In this document: positions 9,248-31,485 of the stretch, in pieces
How the letters are laid out: every line of letters starts with the position of its first letter
How positions within the stretch are numbered: position 1 is the first letter of the stretch
Assembly: GCA_051294905.1 (NCBI GenBank)
Contig: CM119383.1
Span: forward strand, 11,532,001 to 11,596,000
Source of the DNA: Botryllus schlosseri
Taxonomy: Eukaryota
DNA length: 64,000 bases
Direction of reading: 5' to 3'
Program-made: the position numbers and the translations under genes
The notes under the pieces: model-generated
Seen by the model: the letters and a program-made list of their open reading frames with translations, nothing else
Databases searched by the model: none
Told to the model about the DNA's origin: nothing

Positions 9248-9798
9248 ATGGATATTGGTTAGGTAGGCTCTCGATGCAGCGGTTGATGACGAATTAAGGG
9301 CTACCGTTATCAATTAAGATTTTGCGGATATTGTCAAGCAATAAACTCGTCAGTTCGTTACCCGAATATAAAAATTGAGGAAATTGATGACTGAATTTGA
9401 ATAATTATTATATTCATTGTCGTGCACAAATGCAGAACATATTTAGATGAAACAGAATTCGTAGTTAGTATATACAATTTTTTCAGATTTCTGACCTTTA
9501 ATTAACTTCAATCAGAGAAGGAAAAGGAAAAGAGGAGAAGCGCACACAATCCTCAGCCTCACAGTTATCTGCTTATCTATTGTCTTTTTATAACAATGGA
9601 AATAATTTCATTTCATGGTTGAGCGCCAATGTTTATACACCGTAGCGTGGTATCCATAGCTATAGCTGAAGCCATGAATGAAACATTGTTTGAGCTAGTG
9701 TGAGTGTAGTTGTCTTCCCATCGATAACAGCTCGATTTGGACGCGTCTCTTTGCGGAGGCAGGGCGTTTGAAGCGAAATAGTTCATGCTGTCGTGAGG

Positions 9799-12700
9799 AT
9801 GAAAGGGTTTCTCTGTAGTAAAGATGGAACAGTTATTCTTATCGGTAATTCGATGACGATTGGACGCAATGGTTGTAATATCAATATCGATGATCCGCGT
9901 ATAGAATCATGTCATGCTGTATTGGAATTCAACCCTGCGAAATATTGTTATGTCTTACGTGATCTTAACACCTCTTCTGGCACATACGTGAACGAAAGCA
10001 AAGTACAAAACAGCGCTGTTTTCGTGACCCATGGCGACACCATCAGATTTGGCCAGGCTGGAAAACCCTATGAATTGAAATTAAACGAAGAAATGGATAC
10101 CCAAGATAAACCAAGTTGTAGTACGCCGCAACGTCCGATGTCTGCTCATGTAGTAGGGTCGAGAGACAGGTACTCTCAATGTGCTTCAATTAAAAATTCG
10201 CTGCCAAGCATTCATGGGCGAAAATCTCAAATTAAATCAGTCTCTTCACCAAAACCCCCAACCAGACCAAAATCGGCTTGTGAATACACCTCACTACAAG
10301 AAATTCATCAACAAGTACCTGGCAACAATGCGACTGCCACACAAGCGTGGAGTGGCAACCACAGTCTGGATGCGCTAGTGAAGCCTAAGCTACAGAATTT
10401 ATTACATATGGTAGATGAGATGAACACATTTAGCGATTGCGCGTGTCATAGAGATAACGTGATACAAAACATGAGAGATCAAATTATGGAACTATACTGT
10501 AAAGCAGACGAAACCGCCAAATTTGAAGCCAATCAAAATTTCACCCATCAATTGTATCACATGGAGAGAGAATTGGACGAACGGAAATCAGAGATATGCT
10601 TGCTGCGTCAACAGCTTGAATCGACAATGCAGTCGTCTCCGACAATGACATCACAAATTGCTGAGAAAGACAAACTAATCCATGAATTGCGACACGATTT
10701 AGACAAATCAAAGCGCGAATACTCGATGTCTCAAGGCTTGGTTCAATCATTGCAACGTGAGCTTTCGGTGAAGGAAGCCGAAATAAAACGTAAAGCATCG
10801 GAAGTATCGCAGCTCCAACGTAATTTACGAGATAAAGATATCCAATTCCAGTCTCTATCGGCAAAATTTGTGCGTGTTCACGATTGTAAGACAAAAGACG
10901 ACGCGATAAACTCAGTCAATGAAGAGATGAAGTCATTAAAGCAAAAGATACGTCGTCTGGAATCAAGGTCTGGCGATCACACGAGTCTCATAAACCGCTA
11001 CAAAAACGATATAACGCAGCTCAACGAAACTATAAAACGGATGCAGGTTGAAAAAGAAGCGTCCACGAAAGATATGGAGCAGCAGAAAGGAAAATACTTA
11101 GAAGTGCAACGAGCTGAACGTCTATTACGGGTTGATGTCGAACAAGCAAGATGCCGAGTCAACCGATTACGCACAAGAATAGTCAAGGTTCTTTATTCTG
11201 TCTCAGGTGTGAGAGCGCCTGATCATCCAAACGATGTGGAAGACAGCAAACTCATTGTCGATTTAGAATCAGTTCTGAATGACAGAGAAAAGGATAAGAT
11301 TGAGATTAGAAGCCTGAAATCGGAAGCAGAATCCAACCAAAAATTGGAGGCTGAAAAACAATCTTCTGTCGAGTTATTGCAAGAAACGGCCGCAGAAATT
11401 TTGTTGAGTTTTGCAGAAAACGGGCACCACGTCGAGGTTCTTCGCAACAAGCGAGATGATTTATCGAATTTGGAATTGGAAAAACCATTTTTATGGGTGC
11501 GTAAAGCATTCATCGACCTTATCAAAAGCGAGGAACAGTGGCTCAACGAAATATACACGGCATTACGAAGATCTGGTTGTGTCGTAGAGGTATCCGAAAA
11601 GAAGCCCGGAGAATTTATTCTGGAACTGCATCAAGAATTGTTGCAATCGCAAAAGCGCGCGCAAGAGTTGGAACAGTCCATGGCTGAGTTAGTGGAACAA
11701 CACAAGATCGCGTTGTCTGCCAAAGCGGAAGAGATGAGAAGCATTTTCGGAGTGGAGATTGACAAAATGAGAGAAGAGGAAAAAGAAAAAAGGGAACAGC
11801 TCATTCAAGAATTGAAATCACAATTGGAGTCGGACAATGATATCAAGTTACTCGAGGCATCGAGTAAATTTGACGATGCCCAAAGCACAATAGATGATCT
11901 GAAGGCTGAGATCGAAGAGAACAAATCACAAATCGACGATCTCAACCGGGAGATCGAAAGTCTGAACGCGAGCTTGGAGAAAAGTAAAGACAATGAGACG
12001 GCTATTAAAGAGGATTTGAAAACGGTACTGGCTCAACAGAATGATAGCAAGAAATTACTGTCTGAAGAAAGCGAAATAGAGAGGCAAAATCTATTGGCGG
12101 AGGTAGAGCAATATAAAGTCGAAAGTAAACAGCACGCTGTCACGATTGTGAAAATGGAGGAACGCATACAGGATATTATGAAACAATTGGAGAAAGCGCA
12201 AAACAATGCCGAATCTCTACGTGCCGAGTTACGGGAATCAGACGCAGCTAAACACCGACTTCCGCCGACTCCTCCCATTATCGCTCCGCCTCCCATGTTC
12301 GATATCAACGGGTACGAAACCACGATCGCGGCCCTGCGTTCGGAATTAGTAGGCGCTCAAACCCAACTTCACATACAGCAAACTGAAATTTTGGCATTGC
12401 GCAAAGACCTGGCTGGCTCGGAAGCGAAAATTTCCGACATGCGCGGCGAATTGAGCGAACCTTTGAAAGAACAGCTTGAAAACGGCAATCGACTTATACG
12501 CGAGAAAGAAATCGAAAACGCAAAGCTACGGGAAAGCATGCGCGGACTGAACAAGACTGTTGACCGACAAAAAACCGAAATTCGATTGGCCAGAGAAGAA
12601 ATCAAGGAATTAAAGCAAGCGGTTGTACCACACGAAAGCAATGTAGAGCCGACAACCATGCCGGTGGTTACCAAAGTAGAAACAGCGGAAGCATCGACGC

Positions 12701-15700
12701 AAGGTAGTCGCACAGGCAGAATCAACGCAGAGCTCACGTCGTTAGGCGCGGAATGCAAAGGTGAGCGTCACTCTGAAGTAATATCCCGGCAGAGAGAAGC
12801 GCTCGCGGAGCTACGTGCCCGAATCAAAGCCCTCAACCAAGTCCAACCGGTAAGTCCAGGCAATGAGGAACTCGTACAGCAAGTGATGCTCCTTAAAAAA
12901 GAACTGGCTGAGATACGCGCTAGACAGGTTATGGAAAACGATTCGGCTTTCCGCGAGCAGCTTGCGTTCTCTCTCGATGAAGATGCGCCCGCACAGCAAA
13001 ACAATGCTGCTGGTTCAGGGCCGTTAGAATTACAAATTGAAAGAGCTGCGCGTCTGCAATTAGAAGAAGCGCTCGACATGAGCGAGCAGTGCTACCTCGA
13101 TTTATGCAACAACGTCGGCGGGCTGGTGTCGATAACCAGCCTGTCCGGCATGAGATCGGCCAATCACTTGCCCGAAGACGAGCGAATGAGACTCGCTGAC
13201 GACAGGAGGCGTGACCTGGAAGCGATCTCGCAGCGAATCAAATCTCTCACGACGAGATTGGATCGGAAAGACAACCTGTTGCAGAATTACGACAAAGACT
13301 TGGCGAGACTGAGAGAGGCAGAAGAGAAGGCGTCGCAAAAGACGGCACGAGTGAGTTGTTGATTGCGTTGTGATCACGGTCGAGTTATATTGTGGCAGGG
13401 CTCTTCAGCCATGCTCCTCATGTAGAAGTAGACGTCACGTAGAGGTATTTCTACTCAAACTGGAAGCAGTGATTTCCAAGACATGTCCAAGATATTTATT
13501 TTAAGTAGAGAAATGAAGATCTGAAAAGTAAGCCTACTCAAGTAACTACCGGTAGCTTTGAAAAGTAGATTTGGCGATGGGTAAATATGAACATGATGAT
13601 AAGTTCCATCCATATGTAAACTTACTGTAATGATAGTTGGAGGAAAGTATTGAAAATTCCCGTGCTTGCTTTATAGGCTGTTATCAATGGAATACAATCA
13701 ACAAGGAAATAAGACTCCTACTAGCAATCACCGCACTTGCAGTCGTGCGTAAATTATTGATCGCTTTCCAATGTTGCTTTCGGCATATCATACACATGAA
13801 AACGCGAATATGTTAAATATTCATATGTATAATCGAGTCTTTCCCTTGCGGCGGTTCTTGATTGCTGTCTTGAGTTGCAATTTGTTTGACGGCTGTTTTC
13901 ATTTTATTTTCAAAGTCAATCCTATTTTCTCAAATTGAAAAGATTGGTTGCATCAGGTTACTCATGAAAATTTTCCTGACCGCACCATCCAACTTGTATT
14001 AGTCGCGTTTGATTGCATTCAACTTGCTGGCATAAGGATTAGGATTCCAAATGAGCCTTGTACCTGCAATTGTCATCATAACCCATTCTCCCTTTCAATG
14101 TAATTTGACATTTTGTTTCAATGTGGTTGCGATGAGACAACGACAATTTTCTACAACTACAAGTAAATTTCACAATTCGATTTCTTTACCGGCATAACAA
14201 CCAGTAATTACATTCATTATATTGTGTTTGAGTCAAAGCAATGTTGAATGTGTGTGTCGTAGAAAAGGCGGTGTTGAATTGGTAGTCACTCCACCCTTAA
14301 CAACATAACCTTTTGATACAATACGCGCCATTGTTTTGTACATATATAATTGTATATTGTCATTTAACATTTCCATTGCTTTTTGCCCAGGTAAGCGTGT
14401 TGCTTGATGAGATCACAAGCAAGAATGAAGAAAATTCATATTTACGAGAAGCACTTAAACGAACGGACGAGCGTCTGAATCAGGAGAAGCGACTGAACAC
14501 GGCAATCAAGCAGAAGAAGACATTCCATCTTGAAAACTTGGACAAAAGATCACCCCCACCAAGACATGCAAGTAAGCGTTTAGAAGCACGGATCGTTTCA
14601 GGACTCATGTCTGCTTTGCCATTTTACGCGGTCCATTATGGAGCATGTGATGACCTTATCAAGATTTTCGCCCCAGTTATTAAGAAGTAAACTGGATTAA
14701 TAGTTCTTCTGAGTAGCCTACTGCTGTAAGCTGCTTACTCTGGTTTTCAAACTACTTCGAAACATTCAATTTATATTTGAAGACATGCTACAAAGTACTA
14801 TTTCCACATGAATAATATCAGTGACTACATTTTTAAGAGTCAATTACCTAAACTATTGGCTTTGCTGAAGGTAGTTTGATGAAAAAATCTCACTGAAAGT
14901 TCTCCGGCTCTGTTCGAACTTTACGATCGCCGATATAGTGCTTGGATGTTAATTAGTTTGTTGCGATAATGTTCCTATAACTCCAATTCAGAATGCCAAA
15001 AGTCCGAATTTGAAATCGAAGCAGAGAAATCTAAGAAGCGACGAGAAAAGACAAATATTATGAAGAAAGAATATGAAATACAAGTAAGAAATAAGCTATT
15101 GACAACTAACCCTTGAGGTACTGCTATTAGCAAATCATTGTCGGTGACTCATCTAGTCAAGGGCTTTGCTTCTTTCTCAAGTACTAAACGAAAAGATTGT
15201 TTAATCCCAGTTCAAACACACCATGCACTTCAGTGTTAACTGTTTACTGACCGATCATTTTTTCGACTCCCAAATGTATATGTACAAAAATGCCCGGTAG
15301 TTAAACACTAAATCACTCATGTACTCTATTTACAAGACAATCTTTTCTGTTTGTGCAAGAGTGTAAATCATGGCAGATTTCACATTTAATCTCCCTGTCA
15401 TTTGTGAGAGCCATGATCAATTGATCGATGACAAATCCTAGATGTTTGGATAGCTAGTGTAATCTGTGTCGTTGCCAAGGGTGGCAGTCGTGCTTTATGT
15501 ACTGAATTCAAGATGTATTCATTTGTAACCGCTCGGCTCCGGAGCCATAATGACTCCGGACTATCTGGTTGCAAGACCAGTCATGCGTAGGGTAGCATGC
15601 GGTATTGGGAAAGAGGAAGTGATTGGAGTTAGTCTTTTGCATGTAGTTGGATTGCAGTTGGTCTTGATATGGAGTTGGTCTTGGATTGTCTTTGTGTGGA

Positions 15701-24060: not shown

Positions 24061-24900
24061 CAGTGGTTCCCAACCATTTTTTCCTTCATTCCCCACTTTT
24101 GATTTGTTCAGACCTTCATTCCCCACAACCTAAAATTCCTCTATTTAACCTAACCCTTAAAAATGCTCTAGCCAACATAATTTGGTAATACCTTGTTTGA
24201 AGAGCTTCTTGGAAGTACAGAACTTCAATATGAATATACTATTCAATTGTATAATACCTTGTTTCGTAAAGACTTTCTATTGGTGCAAGGTAAGACAGTC
24301 AGGATTTATACTTAAGATCCGTGTAAAGTCAACCGATAATTGTGACAGTTTCTAATTTTTTTTCAACAAACGTGAATCCGAGGTGGAGTTAATATGGTTG
24401 TCTTTTTATTCAACTTTAGTAATTATACGTTTTCATAAACTTCAAGTTAACCAGAGTGATATCCTTAGAATACTGGAGTAAAATCCTGAAAAAAACACTA
24501 AATTTTACCCGAGTTTTTGGTCGGTTGATTAAAAAAAAGATATGCTGGATGTAGATGTAGCGGACTAGCTGCTTGCTTATTCGAGTCCTGCATCAAATAT
24601 CCCTGGGACGTAAAACTTGGTGTATTTGTATCCCGCAAAATTATGCGAAAGCCTATTGCACGTCATGCTGCTCGGGCTAAACGAGTTTGTGACCCCAATA
24701 TTGGTTATCCATAATTCAATACTAGATTTTGTGAACAATACACCATAAAATTAGGGACCAATACAGTCCAAACCAGTGAACTGGTAACCGTAATCGTGAT
24801 GTCAAGTCAGCTTATATATGTATATACTATATATATTGATTTTGCAATGCGTCTGTTCCCCACCAGAAACTCTTGAATCCCCACCGGTTGGGAACCACTG
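24061..24900. mobile_element. hAT-Charlie type MITE, 840 bp
   Basis: TIRs CAGTGGTTCCCAACC / GGTTGGGAACCACTG. Flanks ATCTAGGT / ATCCAGAT (6/8). Confidence 0.85.
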
Positions 24901-25833
24901 ATCCAGATGGAAACATTTTGTTCGGATGAGAGGGCATAAATACCAATCATGTGTTGATATTGTCACAAGTTGATGACTGTGGACCAAAAATTCATTTACA
25001 GAGCACATGAAAATGTGCACAAAGAAGTCTAAAACATTAGTAACAGGATGCTATTAACATCTTTTTGTGAAACATTGAAAATATGAGAAGTGCTAGAAAA
25101 CTTACTCATGTCTTGTCCATTGTACACCCGTGCCTCTGGAGTATACGAAGATTTTCTGTCATCTACTGTGGAAATGGGGGTTCCTCCTCCAGTGTCTTCG
25201 AATATAAAAAAAGTCGCTTGAAAAATGAAGTAATTGCCCGCAGAACACTTAATTCTGTTACTGCAAGCTCAAATGAATATCACAGAATTGGCACTGTGAT
25301 GTCACAATGGGTGGAGTGTACACAATTAGAAAAATTGCCAGGATCTAGGAATGGCAATGTAGGGAGGCCTGTTGACAGCATCGGCAGCTTAGGGATTATA
25401 ATTGGTGTGTCACCCTTTTATGGGGAACACGGTAGGGTCATATTGGGTGGGAAAATATCGGCAGGCTGATCAAGCAAAATTAGAAGGTGAGTGGTTATTG
25501 TAAATCAACAGATTACACCAAGCAGATTTTCCACCACATTTTGCAAGATGCTGGGAATTTCTCAGTGGTGTGATTGATTTATTGATGGTTATAATCTAAT
25601 GCAGGAGAGATGATAGGTAATACTGATGAATATTTTCAACATTGCCATCAATGTTACAGTGAGCTTTTATACGTTACAAAATTACTTGAGCATACTATGA
25701 ATGACACAGCAATGTGTAACTTGTTGTCAGTGTTTTCCAGGCACCAGAAATAGGTAACGGACTACAACATACGGTATCCTACTTTAGCATTCTTTCAGGC
25801 ACATTCAAGCCCTTAACGGCGTTATCGAGAAAC

Positions 25834-28800
25834 ATGAAGAGAGTTCTGGAAAATTGGGAACCGAAAACAAACACAACAAAGAAAACTAAGGTAGGAAAGC
25901 AATAATGAAATGAAATTATGACATAAGACGTTCTGATCTCGTCACCTACAGTTTATCCTTGGTGATACTATGGTATGATCAGACTACAATATTTGGTGAA
26001 GGTAGTTGTGTACTTCAGAGATTGTTCAGCAACTCACAAGTCACGAATATATTGTTGTAATATCAATCACAATATACCAGTGACATGCGAGTCGCTGAAT
26101 ATTTCACTGTAAAATTTTGATCCTTAATATCTTTGTGTAAGTAATTTTGACATATGTCAAACAAAAATGACATCACACTATCTCGTTGGTTGTGTGTTGA
26201 ATACACGACGTTTATGTAACCTAGAACAAGCAACGCGGCACATACGGAAGAAAATGCCTGCCCAGTGGGAAACCCCGAGTTCGCAGAGAAAGTCAACTGG
26301 TGAGAAGTCAAACGGCGTTCAAGAATGGGAAGCATGTCGGCAAAAAATCGTCGAAGGCCGCGCTGCTCAAGAAGTCTAAATCAACACGCCGCGTACCCAC
26401 AACTGACAAAGACGCCAATGACCCTCTGATCAATTCTTTCAATGTACAACCCCGAAATTCGTCAAGCAAAAGGTGGGGAAGCAAGGCCATTTACTGACAC
26501 TACATGAACCTAATTTCGGGTGGTGATAGCCTACTGCCTGAAAGCAGAGCGAAGATATTGATATGCTTCGTGGTCCAAAATTCCAATTATAGCATCCAAC
26601 CATGTATAATCAAAAATAGCTCTGGAATATCCTGTTGCTTTTGAAATCCTTCAATGCAGTCACTGCTTCAAGATTTGGATCACGCATCTTGCCCCAAATA
26701 ACCCAAGTGAAATGATGACAAACTACTTTCGATAACCAGCCGATCACCGAAATGGATGCGGTCGCTATAGAAACACTTATATCTGCTATAGCTATAGTTA
26801 TAAATCAAGTGATTATTGAGTTCTGGACATATCTTTGTCACAAAGATTATTAACCATAATTCTTGATAACCGAAGATATCAAGTTCTTTCTGAAAAAGCT
26901 TCTTTGGCATTACGGTAATATTTAAATGTAAAATTGAATGTCTAGTCTTTTTCCTACATAATACACTATTCATTCATGGTGTTAGTGTATTCAGCTCAAA
27001 ACCAAACTCCTCAGGTTTCCTAGACTCAATTCCACCCCAAATTCATTGCTATCACTCCCGTTCAGATGTCTTGAATGGGTGCAGAATTTACCACATTCGT
27101 CATCTTGGGACACCCATCACACGCTTTCCGGGACGGACATAAGCAGGACCAAGGAACAAACGAAACAGCAACGGAGGAATATCGCGAAGAGGACCTCTCA
27201 ACGAAAGCTGCTCATGCAGAAAATCATGGACGACAAGTTCAAAAAGCTGGACAGCGCCAAGAAAAAGGCGAGCAAAAGACTGGCCAGAAAGGACTCGATG
27301 TTGTGCTCGCAGTTGAATATAAGCAGTGGGGAGCTTGACCTTAAGGGTAAAAGAGGTAAGGCACATGATATTGGCACGCTTTTTCCAAATCTGGATGGAT
27401 TCGCCCTGGCAATATGTGATAAGAGCGGGATTACCAGTTCTTGGGTTTTAAATTTAATGTATACTTAGTACACGGCAGCTATGTGGTTGAATAACATTAG
27501 TCATGTTGTAGCAGGAAAAGTTTTTAAAACAAGAATAAGCAGGCCTCGATTCAAGTAAATTTTGGGCGACCTCTAGTCAACATCACTAATGCTATTTGTG
27601 ACTTTTTGTCTTCAAATTAGTTCTTGGCAAATAATTCCACAAACCACCGAGTCGAAATTTGGACTGGATATAATGATAACATGGAGTTTGGGCTGGAGCA
27701 AAATGTTCTAAAAGTCGTCAGGTATTCAGGTATTCTTTGCGATTTACACGAGCAAATACCTAACTGTAACATAACATAACTGTAACATTGGTAAAGCACG
27801 CACACCAGATAATATCACAACCCCATTGCTCATCCGTTACTGCCTGTCCTCAATCCCGTTATATTTTAAAGAAGTAACACCGAGTCTGTTTCGCAGGCCT
27901 GGGCAAAACAAACTTTTCAAAAAAGCAAAAGAGGAATGTTGACGAAGAATTCGAGCTTGACAAGTCCGTCGCAGTCCCAAAAAAGAAGAAAAAGGTGTCC
28001 AAACGCAAAACCCCAAAAGCCAAACCCGAATACTCGGAAACGGAGAGTTCCAGTCAAGACACTAGTTACGATGACGAGTCTTCTTCGTTCGCTACAGAAT
28101 CGGAAAATCCCTCTGTAAATCCAGACGCTAAAATCGTCGTACCATCTAGTAAAAACCACAAGGCTTCAGAACCAAGGGTTGAAAGTGACGATAACGCGTC
28201 GGTCGGTACGTCCACACTACAAGGCAGAGCAGAGGACATTGTGAAGCGAATGTTTTCCGAAACGGACGTGTGCAGCGTTAGAGAGAGTGGAAAACAAATC
28301 GCGGCATTGTGCTGTCAGACTCTCAAGTCGAGCAAAAGTCAATCCAACAACAAGACTAAATACGCCGATTCAAAATCGTATCAGAGCGGCTCTTCGTGCG
28401 ACAGCAGCCTTTCCGACGACACACAGAGTTGCGCCTCTTCGCTAACTCAACGCGGCAAGCATTACGCGAAACAAACTCATTGCCTGAAAGCCATACAGAA
28501 ACGCAAAGTCAATCTCAAGAAGCAGAAGAGGCGTGGACAGTTGAAAAAACGCCTTGAAGAATCTTGCAAGTCCAAGCCGCGAACCAGAGACGCCACCGAT
28601 CGGATATATGCCAGAAAGCACAGGGCAGGCTTGTATCTGAGTCGCGAAAGACGTACGTTTGTGAAATCGATCTTATTTTTTGCATTGATATTTATATCGT
28701 ATCGACTTTCAGAGAAAGTGTCGCTGGGCTGGGCTATCCTACAGTCCGTCAAACTGTTGCAACAGAAGGCGATACCGTATCCGCTGGCGATTTTGAATAT

Positions 28801-29053
28801 CATGCAGCAGCATTGGCAATTCAGAGACCTGACTCTGGTGTATGTATAAAATCGGCCCCGGATGAGATGATATGAGCTACGTTATATTGTGTTTTCAGCC
28901 AATTGAAGCAAGCGTTGCGTTCCATGGAGAGCAAAGGCGTTTTGAAAAGTACGACGATAAGAGACAACGATAGGGTGTTCACGGTTTTCAGACGGTGAGC
29001 GCTAGTCCATGTTAATCTGGTTATCGATTCTTTTCAGGATAATAAAAATATAG
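25834..29053 (+). CDS. Uncharacterised K/R/S-rich protein with SV40-type NLS and C-terminal winged-helix (H15/SAMD1-like) domain, 529 aa from ATG 25834. Exons 25834-25890, 26225-26472, 27066-27355, 27897-28652, 28713-28839, 28899-28994, 29038-29053. May extend 5' via 25799 and 25420-25486.
   Basis: Seven exons join with GT-AG introns and consistent phases (0,2,1,1,2,2) into 1590 nt ending in TAG. PKKKKKV at ~27978-27997. Spliced C-terminus QKVSLGWAILQSVKLLQQKAIPYPLAILNIMQQHWQFRDLTLVQLKQALRSMESKGVLKSTTIRDNDRVFTVFRRIIKI. The domain call is by eye only. Confidence 0.7.
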
Positions 29054-31485
29054 CCAGAAATGCCAGCCACTCCCGTATTGTATATACATATATCATACGC
29101 ATATACATATATCATGATATATAATTCAAGATGTAATATTGCAAATCATGCAAATTTATAAATTCAGTAAAAGAAATAGATACCGCAGTCAGCAAGAGAA
29201 GACACCTGAATAAGAACACTTTAGTTTGATGCCATCGCGACGAACGGTGGTTCCAAAAGTATAGATGATGAAGGGAAAAAACTTGAGGGTGACAACGCTA
29301 CACCGGAAATTCTTGCAGTCGGAATAATATTTTTATAAATTCTTCACTCGATCTAAGCTACAGCTATCGCGTACTGTACATTTTCATTTTCAAGTCCTCT
29401 GCGTTGTTGCAAAGTTTACGGATTTAATGGTCGATGAGCTTGAAAAATGCATTTCATGTGTGAGGCTTGGTCTTGGTCGTCAGACGCTCATAAAACTCGG
29501 TTTTGGGTCGCGTTTCAAGAAATCTGATAATCACTGTCCAAGGACTTTGTCGAACGTAGTCATTACACAGGCTATCTCAATTCAGAAATGACAAACCCAA
29601 GAGAGCGCAAAAGAGACCCAGTCAACATCAAGGTTTCTCGAGAAGCAAGTCGTCCGTCAAATGCGGCATCCCGATAAAGAAACGAAAAGGCCCGATGCGC
29701 GTCAGATTCCAGCACGGAGAGAAAGACTTCACTTCGGTCAAATGCAAGAGAAACGGAAGCCACTACCTGGACTGCAAAAAGCCGCGGCAAAAGAGATGAT
29801 GCATTCATGTCTTGTTTTAAAGCTAACGCATGAAATAAATGGAATTAATTTCTCCAGCAGGTCGATTTGCTTGTCCTTCTATTATGTTGCAAGTTATTTT
29901 TATGATAGCATGTTGGATTGTGATTCGAGTATGTTGGGCTTTTGGGCTTAGTGACTTGCCAAGACAATAACTACGTAACAGCATGCGATGATTGGTACGA
30001 TGTTAGTCAAAAGGTCGTCGACTCGAGACCATGACCAGTTGGCAACTTGAACTACCGCTATGCAACTAGCAAATTGGTCAAAATTCATGCCTCAATTAGA
30101 AAAAGTAACGTCTGCATTAAAATGAAAAAAAGAGTATCTCAATTTTCAATTATGACCACTGGCAGGAATTGTTTTCAATAAAAATTCAGCAATCCTATTC
30201 AGATCTTCGAAATCTGTGTGCAGTAAATTAGATCAGAAATTGTGACACACATCTTTAATTAACGAAAAACGATTAATCACAAATTAGCACCAGGAGGTCG
30301 CCTCTACCCTCTACCCATGCCTTACAACACAATCAAACACGTCACACACCGTAGTCCAAAATAACAGTAAAAGAAGTACAGGTAACGAATTCGATAAACG
30401 GCCAGTTAAAAAAAAACGCGAATCTCAATTGAGAAACAAGCAAGCGGCATGCAAATGTACGGCCCACAAATCGATTCTATTCCGCCGTTCACAGCAAACT
30501 CACCGTCACCAGTCTTAGAGATTGTCGCACCAACTTTAGAAAACACAGAAGTGGTCTGCATGCAATACACAAATTCAATATTTGGAAGTATCAGTGTACG
30601 GCACCAGGAAGGAAACTATATCGGTTAAATTGCAGGAATGTCCAAGTCAGCTGGCTAATTTCCCCAGCAAGTAAGCCTATCACATCCTGCGTTCTAGCAA
30701 TAGGCCTATAGCAAGTCAGAACATGAAAATTCAGCCTAAAATGTATCCCCCTTTTCAGTGAGCTAGCAAGAAACGTCTGCACAAATGATATTTGTTTTCG
30801 GTACACTACCATTACATTTATAGGACTGGAGGCATTAGGATAATGTGCAACACCTGTAACTACCTCTCGCATCAAATATTGGTTGCAGTGCAGGTATTTA
30901 TATTTCGGGACAGGCCACGCAAAAGTCTGATACGGACGGATATCGTAAACTGGGATAAACTCAAGAGATGAACAAGAGATTGCTAATAAGAAGTAGGGTC
31001 GTTTGTAATTTCAAGCAAGTGCGGTGTTATTGGCAGCCCTTAGGTTAGCATAGCATTTCAGCAGCAATCATATCTTGCATTGCAATATGCATTGTGGCGT
31101 AAAAAGCATGAATAGATCCGGTGCCCCAGCAGATTTCATTAAATGATCTCAAACCACATACATATATTATACGCCAGCCAGTCAGTCAAAAACGATTAAT
31201 AACTCCCCAAACACGGCTTCACTGAACAATCAAAATTATCTAGCACGCAAATATACTCGACAGGATGTAAATGACAACAACGATGGCTGGATTGCAAGGT
31301 AGAATAGGAAAGGAACCAAATCCTAGAAGACTTCATATTATATTTTTATACTTAATCTTACACACGCACACAGAAATCTAATGAAACGCAGTTCATTATA
31401 TTACCGGCATACAATGCCAGATTGTATACCTTACCTTTAAGCATGCCCCTATCAATTTATGCAATAGCAAAGTAACATCTCTCAC

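What the first reader, a model, noticed from the sequence alone, without database searches (positions are those of the whole stretch)
25834..29053. Orphan chromatin-type protein: long basic/Ser-rich region plus C-terminal winged helix visible only after splicing
Seen: ~450 aa of K/R/S-rich low-complexity sequence with PKKKKKV, then a ~75-aa domain split over three tiny introns (60, 59, 43 nt) that the ORF track hides. By eye, WAILQSVKLLQQKAIPYPLAILNIMQQH..QLKQALRSMESKGVL fits the linker-histone H15 pattern (I..AI..L......AI...I......LK.AL......G.L). It also fits the SAMD1/KAT6-type CpG-binding winged helix (WIL..I......RP....I...V...H). Established: H1-derived basic proteins act as ascidian sperm nuclear basic proteins, but with the basic tail C-terminal to the fold. 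Here the order is reversed. Inference: an undescribed lineage-specific linker-histone-like or CpG-reading protein, possibly germline.
Basis: partly seen in the sequence, partly recalled or inferred. Interest (0 to 1): 0.72.

Follow-up and report, generated by a model that had tools for sequence, protein, structure and literature searches.

The report
Sea-squirt basic protein with hidden winged helix
This is a real, spliced, single-copy sea-squirt gene for a very basic 629-residue protein whose best-conserved part is a small winged-helix-like domain closest to the linker-histone and KAT6/SAMD1 types.

Summary
The 43-nt last intron is not supported. The same donor joins an exon 591 nt downstream that adds a 71-residue basic tail, so the fold is not C-terminal.

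The coding region probably also starts 34 codons earlier, at ATG 25420. That start gives MGNTV, which matches MGNIV in the Styela homologues. The corrected protein has 629 aa and a pI near 10.4, and the gene is single copy.

It is not a strict orphan. Homologues exist in Styela clava (an annotated "uncharacterized protein"), in another styelid, and in two closer relatives. The fold region is the most conserved part (49-69% identity, against 27-45% elsewhere).

No Pfam or PDB sequence search gives a significant hit. Four weak lines agree on a winged helix of the H15 / SAMD1-KAT6 class:
- two AlphaFold models with a three-helix core (pLDDT 84-86), though the wing is not modelled;
- Foldseek, which ranks KAT6A WH1 first for both models;
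- language-model neighbours, which are SAMD1_WH and Linker_histone clusters;
- an hhalign match to this genome's own H1 domains (P about 1e-3, reached by 0 of 400 shuffles).

Most likely this is an ascidian-restricted nuclear DNA- or chromatin-binding protein. A germline role was not tested.

The parts
25382..25486 (+). First exon seen in transcripts. The probable true start codon is at 25420 (MGNTVGS...), with an in-frame TAA at 25399 upstream.
   Evidence: The joint 25486>25799 is present in X1 and X5 contigs. The X5 contig reaches about 105 nt upstream of the joint, as worked out from record coordinates and depth. Frame and stop were checked. Styela homologues start MGNIVNT.
25799..25890 (+). 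Exon 2.
26225..26472 (+). Exon 3, basic region.
   Evidence: Joints; frame.
27066..27355 (+). Exon 4. It carries the conserved blocks C-x-x-W-V-x-N-[LI]-P-x-S-S-x-W...H-T-L-S-G and S-Q-R-x-[LI]-L-M.
   Evidence: Joints. Alignment with P0003 and P0004. Single copy in the genome.
27897..28652 (+). Exon 5, the Ser/Lys-rich low-complexity body. Its end holds the conserved RIYARKHRAGLYLSRE block.
   Evidence: Homologues P0001 and P0002 are 42-45% identical.
27977..27997 (+). PKKKKKV, a motif like a monopartite nuclear localisation signal. It lies in a stretch that the Styela homologues lack.
   Evidence: Sequence read. Alignment gap. The NLS reading is an inference from the SV40-type pattern.
28713..28839 (+). 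Exon 6, covering helices 1 and 2 of the winged-helix-like domain (SLGWAILQS...IPYPLAIL...).
   Evidence: The 60-nt intron before it and the 59-nt intron after it are confirmed. Single copy. Helices modelled on homologues.
28899..28994 (+). Exon 7, covering helix 3 (QLKQALRSMESKG) and the presumed wing (TTIRDNDRVFTVF).
   Evidence: The orthologous exon in L002 has the same intron positions. The wing is inferred from the sequence pattern and is not modelled with confidence.
29586..29856 (+). True last exon. It encodes a 71-residue basic tail, with a stop at 29797-29799, AATAAA at 29835-29840, and the contig end at 29856.
   Evidence: Joint 28994>29586 in X1 and X5. Translation. Sequence. The tail aligns with the Styela C-termini.
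29698..29748 (+). Conserved C-terminal motif R-[VIL]-R-F-Q-H-G-x-K-[DE]-F-T-S-V-K-C-[KR].
   Evidence: Alignment of own protein, P0003 and P0004. Single copy.
29038..29053 (+). It is not used in the observed transcripts.
   Evidence: No joint 28994>29038 appears in any run, and X1 and X5 have zero depth over 29025-29555.

Best explanation
An eight-exon, single-copy ascidian gene (window 25420-29799) encodes a 629-residue, pI about 10.4 protein with four parts:
- a conserved MGN-x-V N-terminus;
- about 450 residues of basic, Ser-rich and probably disordered sequence that carries several short conserved blocks;
- one roughly 73-residue winged-helix-type domain (residues about 485-558);
- a 71-residue basic tail that ends in a conserved R-V-R-F-Q-H-G...F-T-S-V-K-C-K motif.

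The most likely mechanism is that the protein is nuclear. The winged helix, which belongs to the structural class of the linker-histone globular domain and the KAT6/SAMD1 WH1, would dock on DNA or nucleosomal DNA. The flanking basic regions would add non-specific electrostatic affinity, and the conserved short motifs would recruit partners.

Shown here: the gene model, transcription, single-copy status, conservation across ascidians, and a three-helix core whose structural neighbours are all winged helices.

Inferred: the wing, DNA binding, nuclear localisation, and any partner.
For: Gene model: spliced contigs and one raw read; frames.

Single copy.

Homologues:
- P0004 is Styela clava LOC120339341 (563 aa).
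- P0003 is 558 aa.
- P0001 and P0002 are partial.
- L002 is a genomic contig of a relative with the same intron positions.

Conservation: the WH is the best-conserved part. Identity is 68.5% against 42-45% in exon 5 for the close relatives, and 49-51% against 27% in the N-terminal part for Styela.

Fold:
- Model 2 has mean pLDDT 72, with the three helices at 84-86.
- In VIA-align, all 50 top rows for both models are winged helices. SAMD1 6lui scores Z 7.1 and 6.8, GH5 1hst 6.7 and 6.8, ZMYND11 9loa 6.7 and 6.5.
- In Foldseek against the PDB, the top three rows for both models are KAT6A WH1 (E 0.28-0.6, prob 0.94-0.97, 21-24% identity), with H1 and H5 rows lower in the model 1 list.
- The AlphaFold DB rows include H1, H15 and KAT6 proteins.

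Language model: the nearest clusters are SAMD1_WH (0.81, 0.80, 0.78) and Linker_histone (0.77).

Profile comparison: the family WH against this genome's own H1 domains scores 23.3, P 9.5e-4, over 66 ungapped columns that span the whole domain. None of 200 + 200 column shuffles reach that score. The scores are 14.5 against SAMD1-like, 12.5 against Forkhead and 8.4 against La.

Composition: pI 10.4, tail K+R 34%, WH pI 11.
Against: - No sequence profile is significant. Pfam finds nothing at E<=10 for the joined domain, its pieces or the full-length homologue.
- PF00538 and PF21524 scans of the genome find true H1, KAT6-like and ZMYND11-like loci but not this one.
- All structure-search E-values are above 0.01, and all Z scores are below 8, a range the tool itself calls common.
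- The models were made on Styela-group homologues with only 4-7 alignment rows.
- The wing region has pLDDT below 65 and is drawn as a helix.
- The related ZMYND11 WH did not bind DNA in EMSA (PMC9881136), so the fold class does not guarantee DNA binding.
- A conserved Gly2 start fits N-myristoylation, which would point to membranes as well as, or instead of, chromatin.
Confidence: 0.45

Rival explanations
1. The protein is a scaffold or adaptor rather than a DNA binder. In this reading the winged helix is a protein-protein module, as in ZMYND11, cullin WHB or Stn1. The protein would work through its short motifs: an N-terminal myristoyl anchor (MGN-x-V) and a C-terminal R-[VI]-x-F type docking site for protein phosphatase 1.
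For: - The MGN-x-V start is conserved in own protein, P0003 and P0004, although the next 30 residues diverge. All three fit the PROSITE-type N-myristoylation pattern, which I cite from memory.
- The R-V-R-F (own) and R-I-R-F (S. clava) motifs fit the loose RVxF consensus, also from memory.
- The ZMYND11 WH lacks DNA binding in EMSA (PMC9881136).
- Structural neighbours include the non-DNA-binding winged helices of cullin, APC2 and Stn1 at nearly the same Z.
Against: - P0003 has R-L-R-F, which falls outside the usual [VI] position.
- No partner was tested.
- The extreme basicity, the NLS-like motif, and the specific profile signal to H15 rather than to other winged helices favour nucleic-acid binding.
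- AlphaFold gives the tail motif no structure.
Confidence: 0.25
2. The protein is a germline linker-histone-like or sperm nuclear basic protein.
For: - The best profile-profile match is to H1 globular domains of the same genome.
- The domain is followed by a basic tail.
- The AlphaFold DB Swiss-Prot rows are mostly H1 and include a mussel sperm protein, PHI-2B.
- A literature on H1-derived sperm proteins in tunicates exists (Saperas and Ausio 2013, cited in PMC12216123).
Against: - The architecture is wrong for H1: about 484 residues precede the fold, the tail has only 71 residues, and overall Ala is only 4.9%.
- The protein contains acidic, Ser-rich stretches.
- The genome has many canonical H1 genes, including one with KSPKKKK repeats (L003).
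- The PF00538 profile does not score the locus.
- Tissue of expression is unknown, and the bulk RNA run X23 gave only 4 reads.
Confidence: 0.1
3. The protein is a fast-evolved orthologue of a known metazoan gene, and only looks lineage-specific because tunicate proteins diverge quickly.
For: - Own protein and Styela share only 27% identity outside the fold, so deeper relatives would escape HMMER.
- The searches either needed shared 5-mers or used a low-complexity query.
Against: - An exhaustive phmmer search of 1.84 billion representatives found only three ascidian-type proteins.
- Pfam finds no family on the full-length homologue.
- A phmmer search of the full-length homologue against PDB sequences found nothing at E<=1.
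- A language-model search of the whole protein, and of the conserved N-terminal blocks, found nothing.
- The genome has separate KAT6-like, ZMYND11-like, H1 and ELL loci.
Confidence: 0.1
4. The domain is not a winged helix. It would then be a plain three-helix bundle of the Myb/SANT or another HTH type, and the similarity to H15 would reflect only helical periodicity.
For: - The wing is unmodelled, with pLDDT 43-64, and is drawn as a helix.
- Foldseek also lists Myb-type PHR1 and ARR1 domains at E about 1.
- Column shuffles destroy amphipathic periodicity, so they are a lenient control.
Against: - The hhalign alignment to H15 is ungapped over all 66 columns, including the wing. It beats the real Forkhead and La domains of the same genome.
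- The wing sequences show a beta-type alternation, V-F-T-V-F, I-L-T-I-F and Y-S-[VI], in register with F-R-L and Y-R-I of H1.
- All 50 VIA rows in both searches are winged helices.
Confidence: 0.1

Closest known systems
SAMD1-like winged helix group (KAT6A/KAT6B WH1, SAMD1 WH, ZMYND11 WH; Pfam PF21524)
   Same: - The domains have about the same size and the same helix order.
- KAT6A WH1 is the first Foldseek match for both models, and SAMD1 6lui is at or near the top of the VIA lists.
- The language-model neighbours are SAMD1_WH clusters.
- The end of helix 1 reads Q-K-x-I-P. This genome's KAT6-like locus reads Q-K-Q-R-P at the same place. The Lys is invariant in all four family members. In KAT6A the corresponding Lys24 is the main CpG contact (PMC9881136).
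   Different: - The PF21524 profile does not score the domain.
- The residue after the Lys (Gln25 in KAT6A) is Ala, Ser or Gly, and the Arg before the Pro is Ile.
- The domain lies near the C-terminus rather than at the N-terminus.
- There is no SAM, MYST, PHD, bromo or PWWP partner domain.
- hhalign against the two SAMD1-like sequences of this genome is weak (P 0.06; 9 of 200 shuffles reach it).
Linker histone H1/H5 globular domain (H15, Pfam PF00538)
   Same: - This is the best and most specific profile-profile signal: score 23.3, P 9.5e-4, 66 ungapped columns from helix 1 to the wing.
- GH5, H1.8, H1 and Hho1p all appear among the top VIA rows at Z 6.1-6.8.
- A basic tail follows the fold.
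   Different: - The PF00538 profile does not score it, although it finds 19 loci elsewhere in the genome.
- About 484 residues precede the fold, against about 20-40 in H1.
- The tail is short, is not Ala/Pro/Lys-rich, and carries a conserved Cys/His-containing motif.
- The gene has seven introns.
Styela clava LOC120339341 "uncharacterized protein" (P0004) and its styelid relative P0003
   Same: They share the same architecture and the same conserved blocks from the N-terminus to the C-terminus: MGN-x-V, C-x-x-W-V...H-T-L-S-G, S-Q-R-x-L-L-M, Y-x-R-K-H-R-x-G-L, the WH, and R-x-R-F-Q-H-G...F-T-S-V-K-C. These are true family members.
   Different: - Identity is only 27% outside the fold.
- They lack the acidic, Ser-rich insert and the PKKKKKV stretch of the window protein.
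- No function is recorded for them, and no paper mentions the locus.

Membership tests
Linker histone H15 domain (PF00538 / PROSITE H15) | Significant match to the family profile. | tested here: not met
   hmmscan of the joined domain, its pieces and the homologue finds no PF00538 row at E<=10. A genome-wide PF00538 scan at E<=10 lists 19 loci, none in this window. Only a sub-threshold hhalign signal exists (P 9.5e-4, probability 22%).
Linker histone H15 domain (PF00538 / PROSITE H15) | Three helices followed by a beta-hairpin wing in about 75 residues. | tested here: inconclusive
   The three helices are modelled at pLDDT 84-86. The wing region is at 43-64 and is drawn as a helix. The sequence pattern of the wing is compatible with a hairpin.
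Linker histone H15 domain (PF00538 / PROSITE H15) | Tripartite histone architecture: a short N-tail, a central globular domain and a long Lys/Ala/Pro-rich C-tail. | tested here: not met
   About 484 residues come before the fold and 71 after it, and overall Ala is 4.9%.
Linker histone H15 domain (PF00538 / PROSITE H15) | Binds the nucleosome at the dyad and linker DNA. | not testable with these tools
   This needs a biochemical assay.
SAMD1-like winged helix (PF21524) | Significant match to the family profile. | tested here: not met
   No PF21524 row appears at E<=10. The genome scan finds a KAT6-like locus (48.6 bits) and a ZMYND11-like locus (22.3 bits) but not this one.
SAMD1-like winged helix (PF21524) | Closest solved structures are KAT6A, SAMD1 or ZMYND11 WH. 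| tested here: inconclusive
   KAT6A 7y43 and 8h7a rank 1-3 in Foldseek for both models, but at E 0.28-0.6. SAMD1 6lui at Z 7.1 and 6.8 is tied with Fur, MCM, Stn1 and GH5.
SAMD1-like winged helix (PF21524) | [quoted passage not shown] | tested here: inconclusive
   The Lys is invariant in K-x-I-P-Y-P across four species. The next residue is Ala, Ser or Gly rather than Gln, and the Arg before the Pro is Ile. The register was set by eye against the KAT6-like locus L015 and the papers.
SAMD1-like winged helix (PF21524) | N-terminal position, combined with a SAM, MYST or PHD-bromo-PWWP module. | tested here: not met
   The domain lies at residues about 485-558 of 629, and no other Pfam domain is found in the homologue.
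Winged helix-turn-helix fold (general) | Structural neighbours are winged helices over most of the domain. | tested here: met
   All 50 top rows in both VIA searches are winged-helix domains, with 49-69 residues aligned and Z 5.5-7.5. The ESM Atlas shape search returns mainly Fur, PadR, BlaI-type, H15 and HARE-HTH clusters, among some unnamed ones. Model confidence is moderate.
ELL N2 winged helix (PF10390) | Profile match, or an alignment in register with the ELL fold. | tested here: not met
   The only PDB sequence hit, ELL2 2e5n at E 0.3, aligns my helix 1 with what I recall as ELL2's helix 3 and wing. Pfam shows no ELL row. The genome has its own ELL gene on another contig.

The most novel reading that the evidence does not exclude
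An ascidian-specific chromatin tether. In this reading the protein is N-myristoylated and membrane-anchored, its H15/KAT6-like winged helix and basic tail hold DNA or nucleosomes, and the conserved R-V-x-F tail brings protein phosphatase 1 to that site. I know of no described protein with this combination of lipid anchor, linker-histone-class fold and phosphatase docking site.
Probability: 0.08. Interest if true: 0.6.

Novelty: new variant of a known kind. Interest (0 to 1): 0.35.

Why it matters
If the reading holds, ascidians have a conserved and so far uncharacterised nuclear protein family. It would carry a linker-histone / KAT6-class winged helix too diverged for any profile to recognise, set in an architecture unlike H1, KAT6, SAMD1 or ZMYND11. 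That would add one more independent use of this fold and give a concrete candidate for a lineage-specific chromatin function in a chordate model group.

On the practical side, the corrected gene model and the list of conserved blocks make the family testable. The changes are a start at 25420, a 591-nt last intron and a 629-aa product. This is not a surprising kind of discovery, because taxonomically restricted basic proteins with one cryptic domain are common.

Tried and rejected
I did not send it to any other remote tool and modelled the Styela-group homologues instead.
- Weak Pfam rows were treated as noise: KNTC1 ARM (E 0.04), Flu_M1_C, DUF7413 and KELK. All lie below their cut-offs and in low-complexity or helical stretches.
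- PDB sequence hits to complement C1r and KdgR (E 0.17-1.5) were rejected as chance.
- ELL2 2e5n (E 0.3) was rejected. The alignment is out of register with the fold, and the genome has its own ELL gene.
- All three word-seeded protein searches and the one exhaustive search found only ascidian-type relatives.
- The contig that carries P0002 could not be fetched.
- MAFFT repeatedly placed the exon-7 pieces on helix 1 instead of helix 3, so these rows were left out of the modelling alignments.
- Language-model searches of the whole homologue and of its N-terminal blocks gave nothing.
- I did not find the upstream exon of the KAT6-like locus L015 within 1.5 kb, so the SAMD1-like comparison set stayed poor.
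- Complex prediction was not used, because no suitable partner sequence was available by reference.
Full report
**Observation and gene model**

I laid public runs on 24600-29900. Runs X1 and X5 come from two studies and are labelled only as probable RNA, but their contigs are spliced. They carry these joints:
- 25486>25799
- 25890>26225
- 26472>27066
- 27355>27897
- 28652>28713 (60 nt)
- 28839>28899 (59 nt)
- 28994>29586 (591 nt)

One raw RNA-seq read in X23 also spans 27355>27897.

The 43-nt intron and the 16-nt terminal exon (29038-29053) are not used. X1 and X5 have zero depth between 29025 and 29555. From the same donor the frame continues at 29586 for 71 codons, to a stop at 29797-29799. 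An AATAAA lies at 29835-29840, just before the contig end at 29856.

At the 5' end the transcripts contain one more exon. The X5 contig starts near 25382, and the exon ends at 25486. This exon holds an ATG at 25420, in frame with the rest and preceded by a TAA at 25399. The 34 added residues begin MGNTVGS. I take 25420 as the start, which gives 629 residues and a pI of about 10.4.

**Copy number and relatives**

Three exons searched as protein against the whole 495-Mb assembly each match only this locus. The gene is therefore neither a repeat nor part of a family within the genome.

- A word-seeded search with exon 5 plus exon 6 found two open frames of the exon-5 type from other sequencing runs. 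They are 40-45% identical by the search tools and 42-45% in my global alignment.
- The contig of one of these (L002) also carries the two domain exons, with introns at the same codon positions.
- An exhaustive phmmer search over 1.84 billion cluster representatives added one full-length protein, P0003 (558 aa).
- A search from P0003 found P0004, annotated by NCBI as "uncharacterized protein LOC120339341" of Styela clava.
- A profile search of the whole family found nothing more.

The alignment of own protein, P0003 and P0004 shows conserved blocks along the whole length:
- the MGN-x-V start;
- M-[KR]-R-x-[LV]-x-x-W-E;
- C-x-x-W-V-x-N-[LI]-P-x-S-S-x-W...H-T-L-S-G;
- S-Q-R-x-[LI]-L-M;
- [IV]-Y-x-R-K-H-R-x-G-L, directly before the domain;
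- the domain itself;
- R-[VIL]-R-F-Q-H-G-x-K-[DE]-F-T-S-V-K-C near the C-terminus.

The domain is the best-conserved part. Identity is 68.5% with the L002 species, against 42-45% in exon 5. It is 49-51% with the Styela group, against 27% in the N-terminal part.

**What the domain is**

Sequence profiles are silent:
- Pfam finds no family for the pieces, for the joined domain or for the full-length homologue at E<=10.
- PDB sequence searches give only chance-level rows.
- Genome-wide scans with PF00538 and PF21524 find the true H1 genes, a KAT6-like locus and a ZMYND11-like locus, but not this locus.

- Model 1 (P0004 405-563) is poor, with mean pLDDT 52 and a disordered tail.
- Model 2 (P0003 414-498) has mean pLDDT 72, with three helices at 84-86. 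The stretch where the wing should be is at 43-64 and is drawn as a helix.

Structure searches gave the following:
- Foldseek against the PDB puts KAT6A WH1 (7y43, 8h7a) at ranks 1-3 for both models (E 0.28-0.6, probability 0.94-0.97, 21-24% identity). H1.0, H5, Hho1p and ZMYND11 appear further down the model 1 list.
- The Foldseek-independent VIA-align search returns only winged helices in its top 50 for both models. SAMD1 6lui scores Z 7.1 and 6.8, GH5 1hst 6.7 and 6.8, ZMYND11 9loa 6.7 and 6.5. These are tied within 1 Z with Fur/Nur, MCM and Stn1 winged helices.
- The tool warns that Z below 8 is common, so this shows the fold class and not the family.
- The AlphaFold DB rows are dominated by H1, H15 and KAT6 entries at weak E-values.
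- The ESM Atlas shape search gives mostly generic wHTH families plus H15.

The protein-language-model search of the domain lists three SAMD1_WH clusters (0.81, 0.80, 0.78) and a Linker_histone cluster (0.77). All of these are below the 0.9 level at which the tool calls a hit more than a lead.

For a test that does not depend on a model, I built two alignments. One holds the four family domains. The other holds four H1 globular domains taken from this genome's own H1 genes. I compared them with hhalign. The result was a score of 23.3 and P 9.5e-4, over 66 ungapped columns from helix 1 through the wing.
- None of 200 shuffles of the H15 columns reach this score (maximum 18.3).
- None of 200 shuffles of the query columns reach it (maximum 20.2).
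- Real winged helices of other families from the same genome score much lower: SAMD1-like 14.5, Forkhead 12.5, La 8.4. No other pair among the five families exceeds 14.6.

The hhalign probability is only 22%, so this is a specific but sub-threshold signal.

Taken together, the domain is very probably a winged-helix-type domain, and its nearest kin are the H15 / SAMD1-like class. Membership in either Pfam family is not shown.

One detail bears on the CpG-reader idea. The end of helix 1 reads Q-K-x-I-P-Y-P with an invariant Lys. This genome's KAT6-like locus reads Q-K-Q-R-P at the same place. In KAT6A, Lys24 and Gln25 at this position make the CpG contacts (PMC9881136). In SAMD1, Arg45 and Lys46 do so (PMC8115922). 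Here only the Lys is kept. The same paper reports that the ZMYND11 WH does not bind DNA in EMSA, so the fold class alone does not predict DNA binding.

**How it most likely works**

Shown:
- a transcribed, conserved, single-copy gene;
- a strongly basic product, with pI 10.4, a domain region of pI 11, and a tail with K+R of 34%;
- a three-helix domain of the winged-helix class under stronger constraint than the rest of the protein.

Inferred:
- nuclear localisation, from PKKKKKV at 27977-27997 and other basic clusters;
- DNA or nucleosome binding by the domain, helped by the basic flanks;
- partner recruitment by the conserved short blocks.

Two motifs are worth testing, though I read them from consensus patterns recalled from memory. 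The MGN-x-V start fits N-myristoylation. The R-V-R-F / R-I-R-F tail fits the loose PP1-docking pattern, but P0003 has R-L-R-F. I put the nuclear DNA/chromatin-binding reading at about 0.45 and a non-DNA scaffold reading at about 0.25. The remainder is split between a germline H1-like role, a hidden orthologue of a known gene, and a domain that is not a winged helix.

Three parts of the interpretation fail:
- The protein is not an orphan in the strict sense.
- The fold is not C-terminal.
- The "reversed order" contrast with H1 does not hold, because a basic tail does follow the fold. The roughly 484-residue N-terminal part is, however, unlike any H1.

The germline idea could not be tested. Run names and tissues are coded, and the one bulk RNA run gave only four reads.

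**Novelty and score**

No paper mentions the Styela locus, and no database family covers the protein. It is an undescribed, ascidian-restricted family that uses a known fold class in a new architecture, so I rate it a new variant of a known kind. This is useful for annotating tunicate genomes and worth a bench test, but it is not surprising in kind. Interest is 0.35.

Noticed in passing
window 25420-25437; P0003 and P0004 residues 1-6: The family's N-terminus is MGN-x-V in three distant ascidians, although the next 30 or so residues diverge. This fits an N-myristoylation signal (Gly2, with a small residue at position 6), which is unexpected for a protein that otherwise looks nuclear.
   Followed up: partly
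window 25104-25196: Contigs of X1, X5 and X15 cover just this 93-nt stretch, with unrelated sequence on both sides. It looks like an exon of another spliced transcript, lying about 200 nt upstream of the gene's first exon and inside the mechanical ORF 25083-25469. Its strand and gene are not determined.
   Followed up: no
window 9793-13362 (+): A 1189-aa uninterrupted ORF upstream of the gene. By eye it has an FHA-like N-terminus followed by a very long coiled-coil region. It was not searched.
   Followed up: no
L003 (G000:C10:16831575-16831790) and the tandem loci L009-L014 on C8: The genome holds many canonical H1 genes. One has a tail of KSPKKKK repeats, which looks sperm-H1-like. There is an array on contig 8 with copies about 5.8 kb apart, and another group on contig 1.
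   Followed up: partly
L016 (G000:C2:10342096-10342245): A 562-aa open frame starts with a weak SAMD1_WH match (22.3 bits). By eye it continues into PHD-like and PWWP-like sequence, which suggests a ZMYND11-type gene carried in one long exon.
   Followed up: no
window 28745-28786 versus 28900-28941: Helix 1 (AILQSVKLLQQKAI) and helix 3 (QLKQALRSMESKGV) of the domain resemble each other enough that MAFFT placed the exon-7 piece on helix 1 three times. I could not tell whether this reflects an internal repeat or only shared amphipathic periodicity.
   Followed up: no
window 29704-29772: The conserved tail motif holds His, Cys and His at fixed spacing (H-x10-C-x5 or 6-H) in all three full-length proteins. 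The window protein has a further Cys four residues later. This could be a small metal site. AlphaFold gives it no structure.
   Followed up: no
window 27277-29900 in run X15: The genomic-type contigs of X15 differ from the window at many intron positions, including small deletions at 27617, 27620 and 28676, and at few exon positions. This is ordinary polymorphism and is consistent with constraint on the exons.
   Followed up: no
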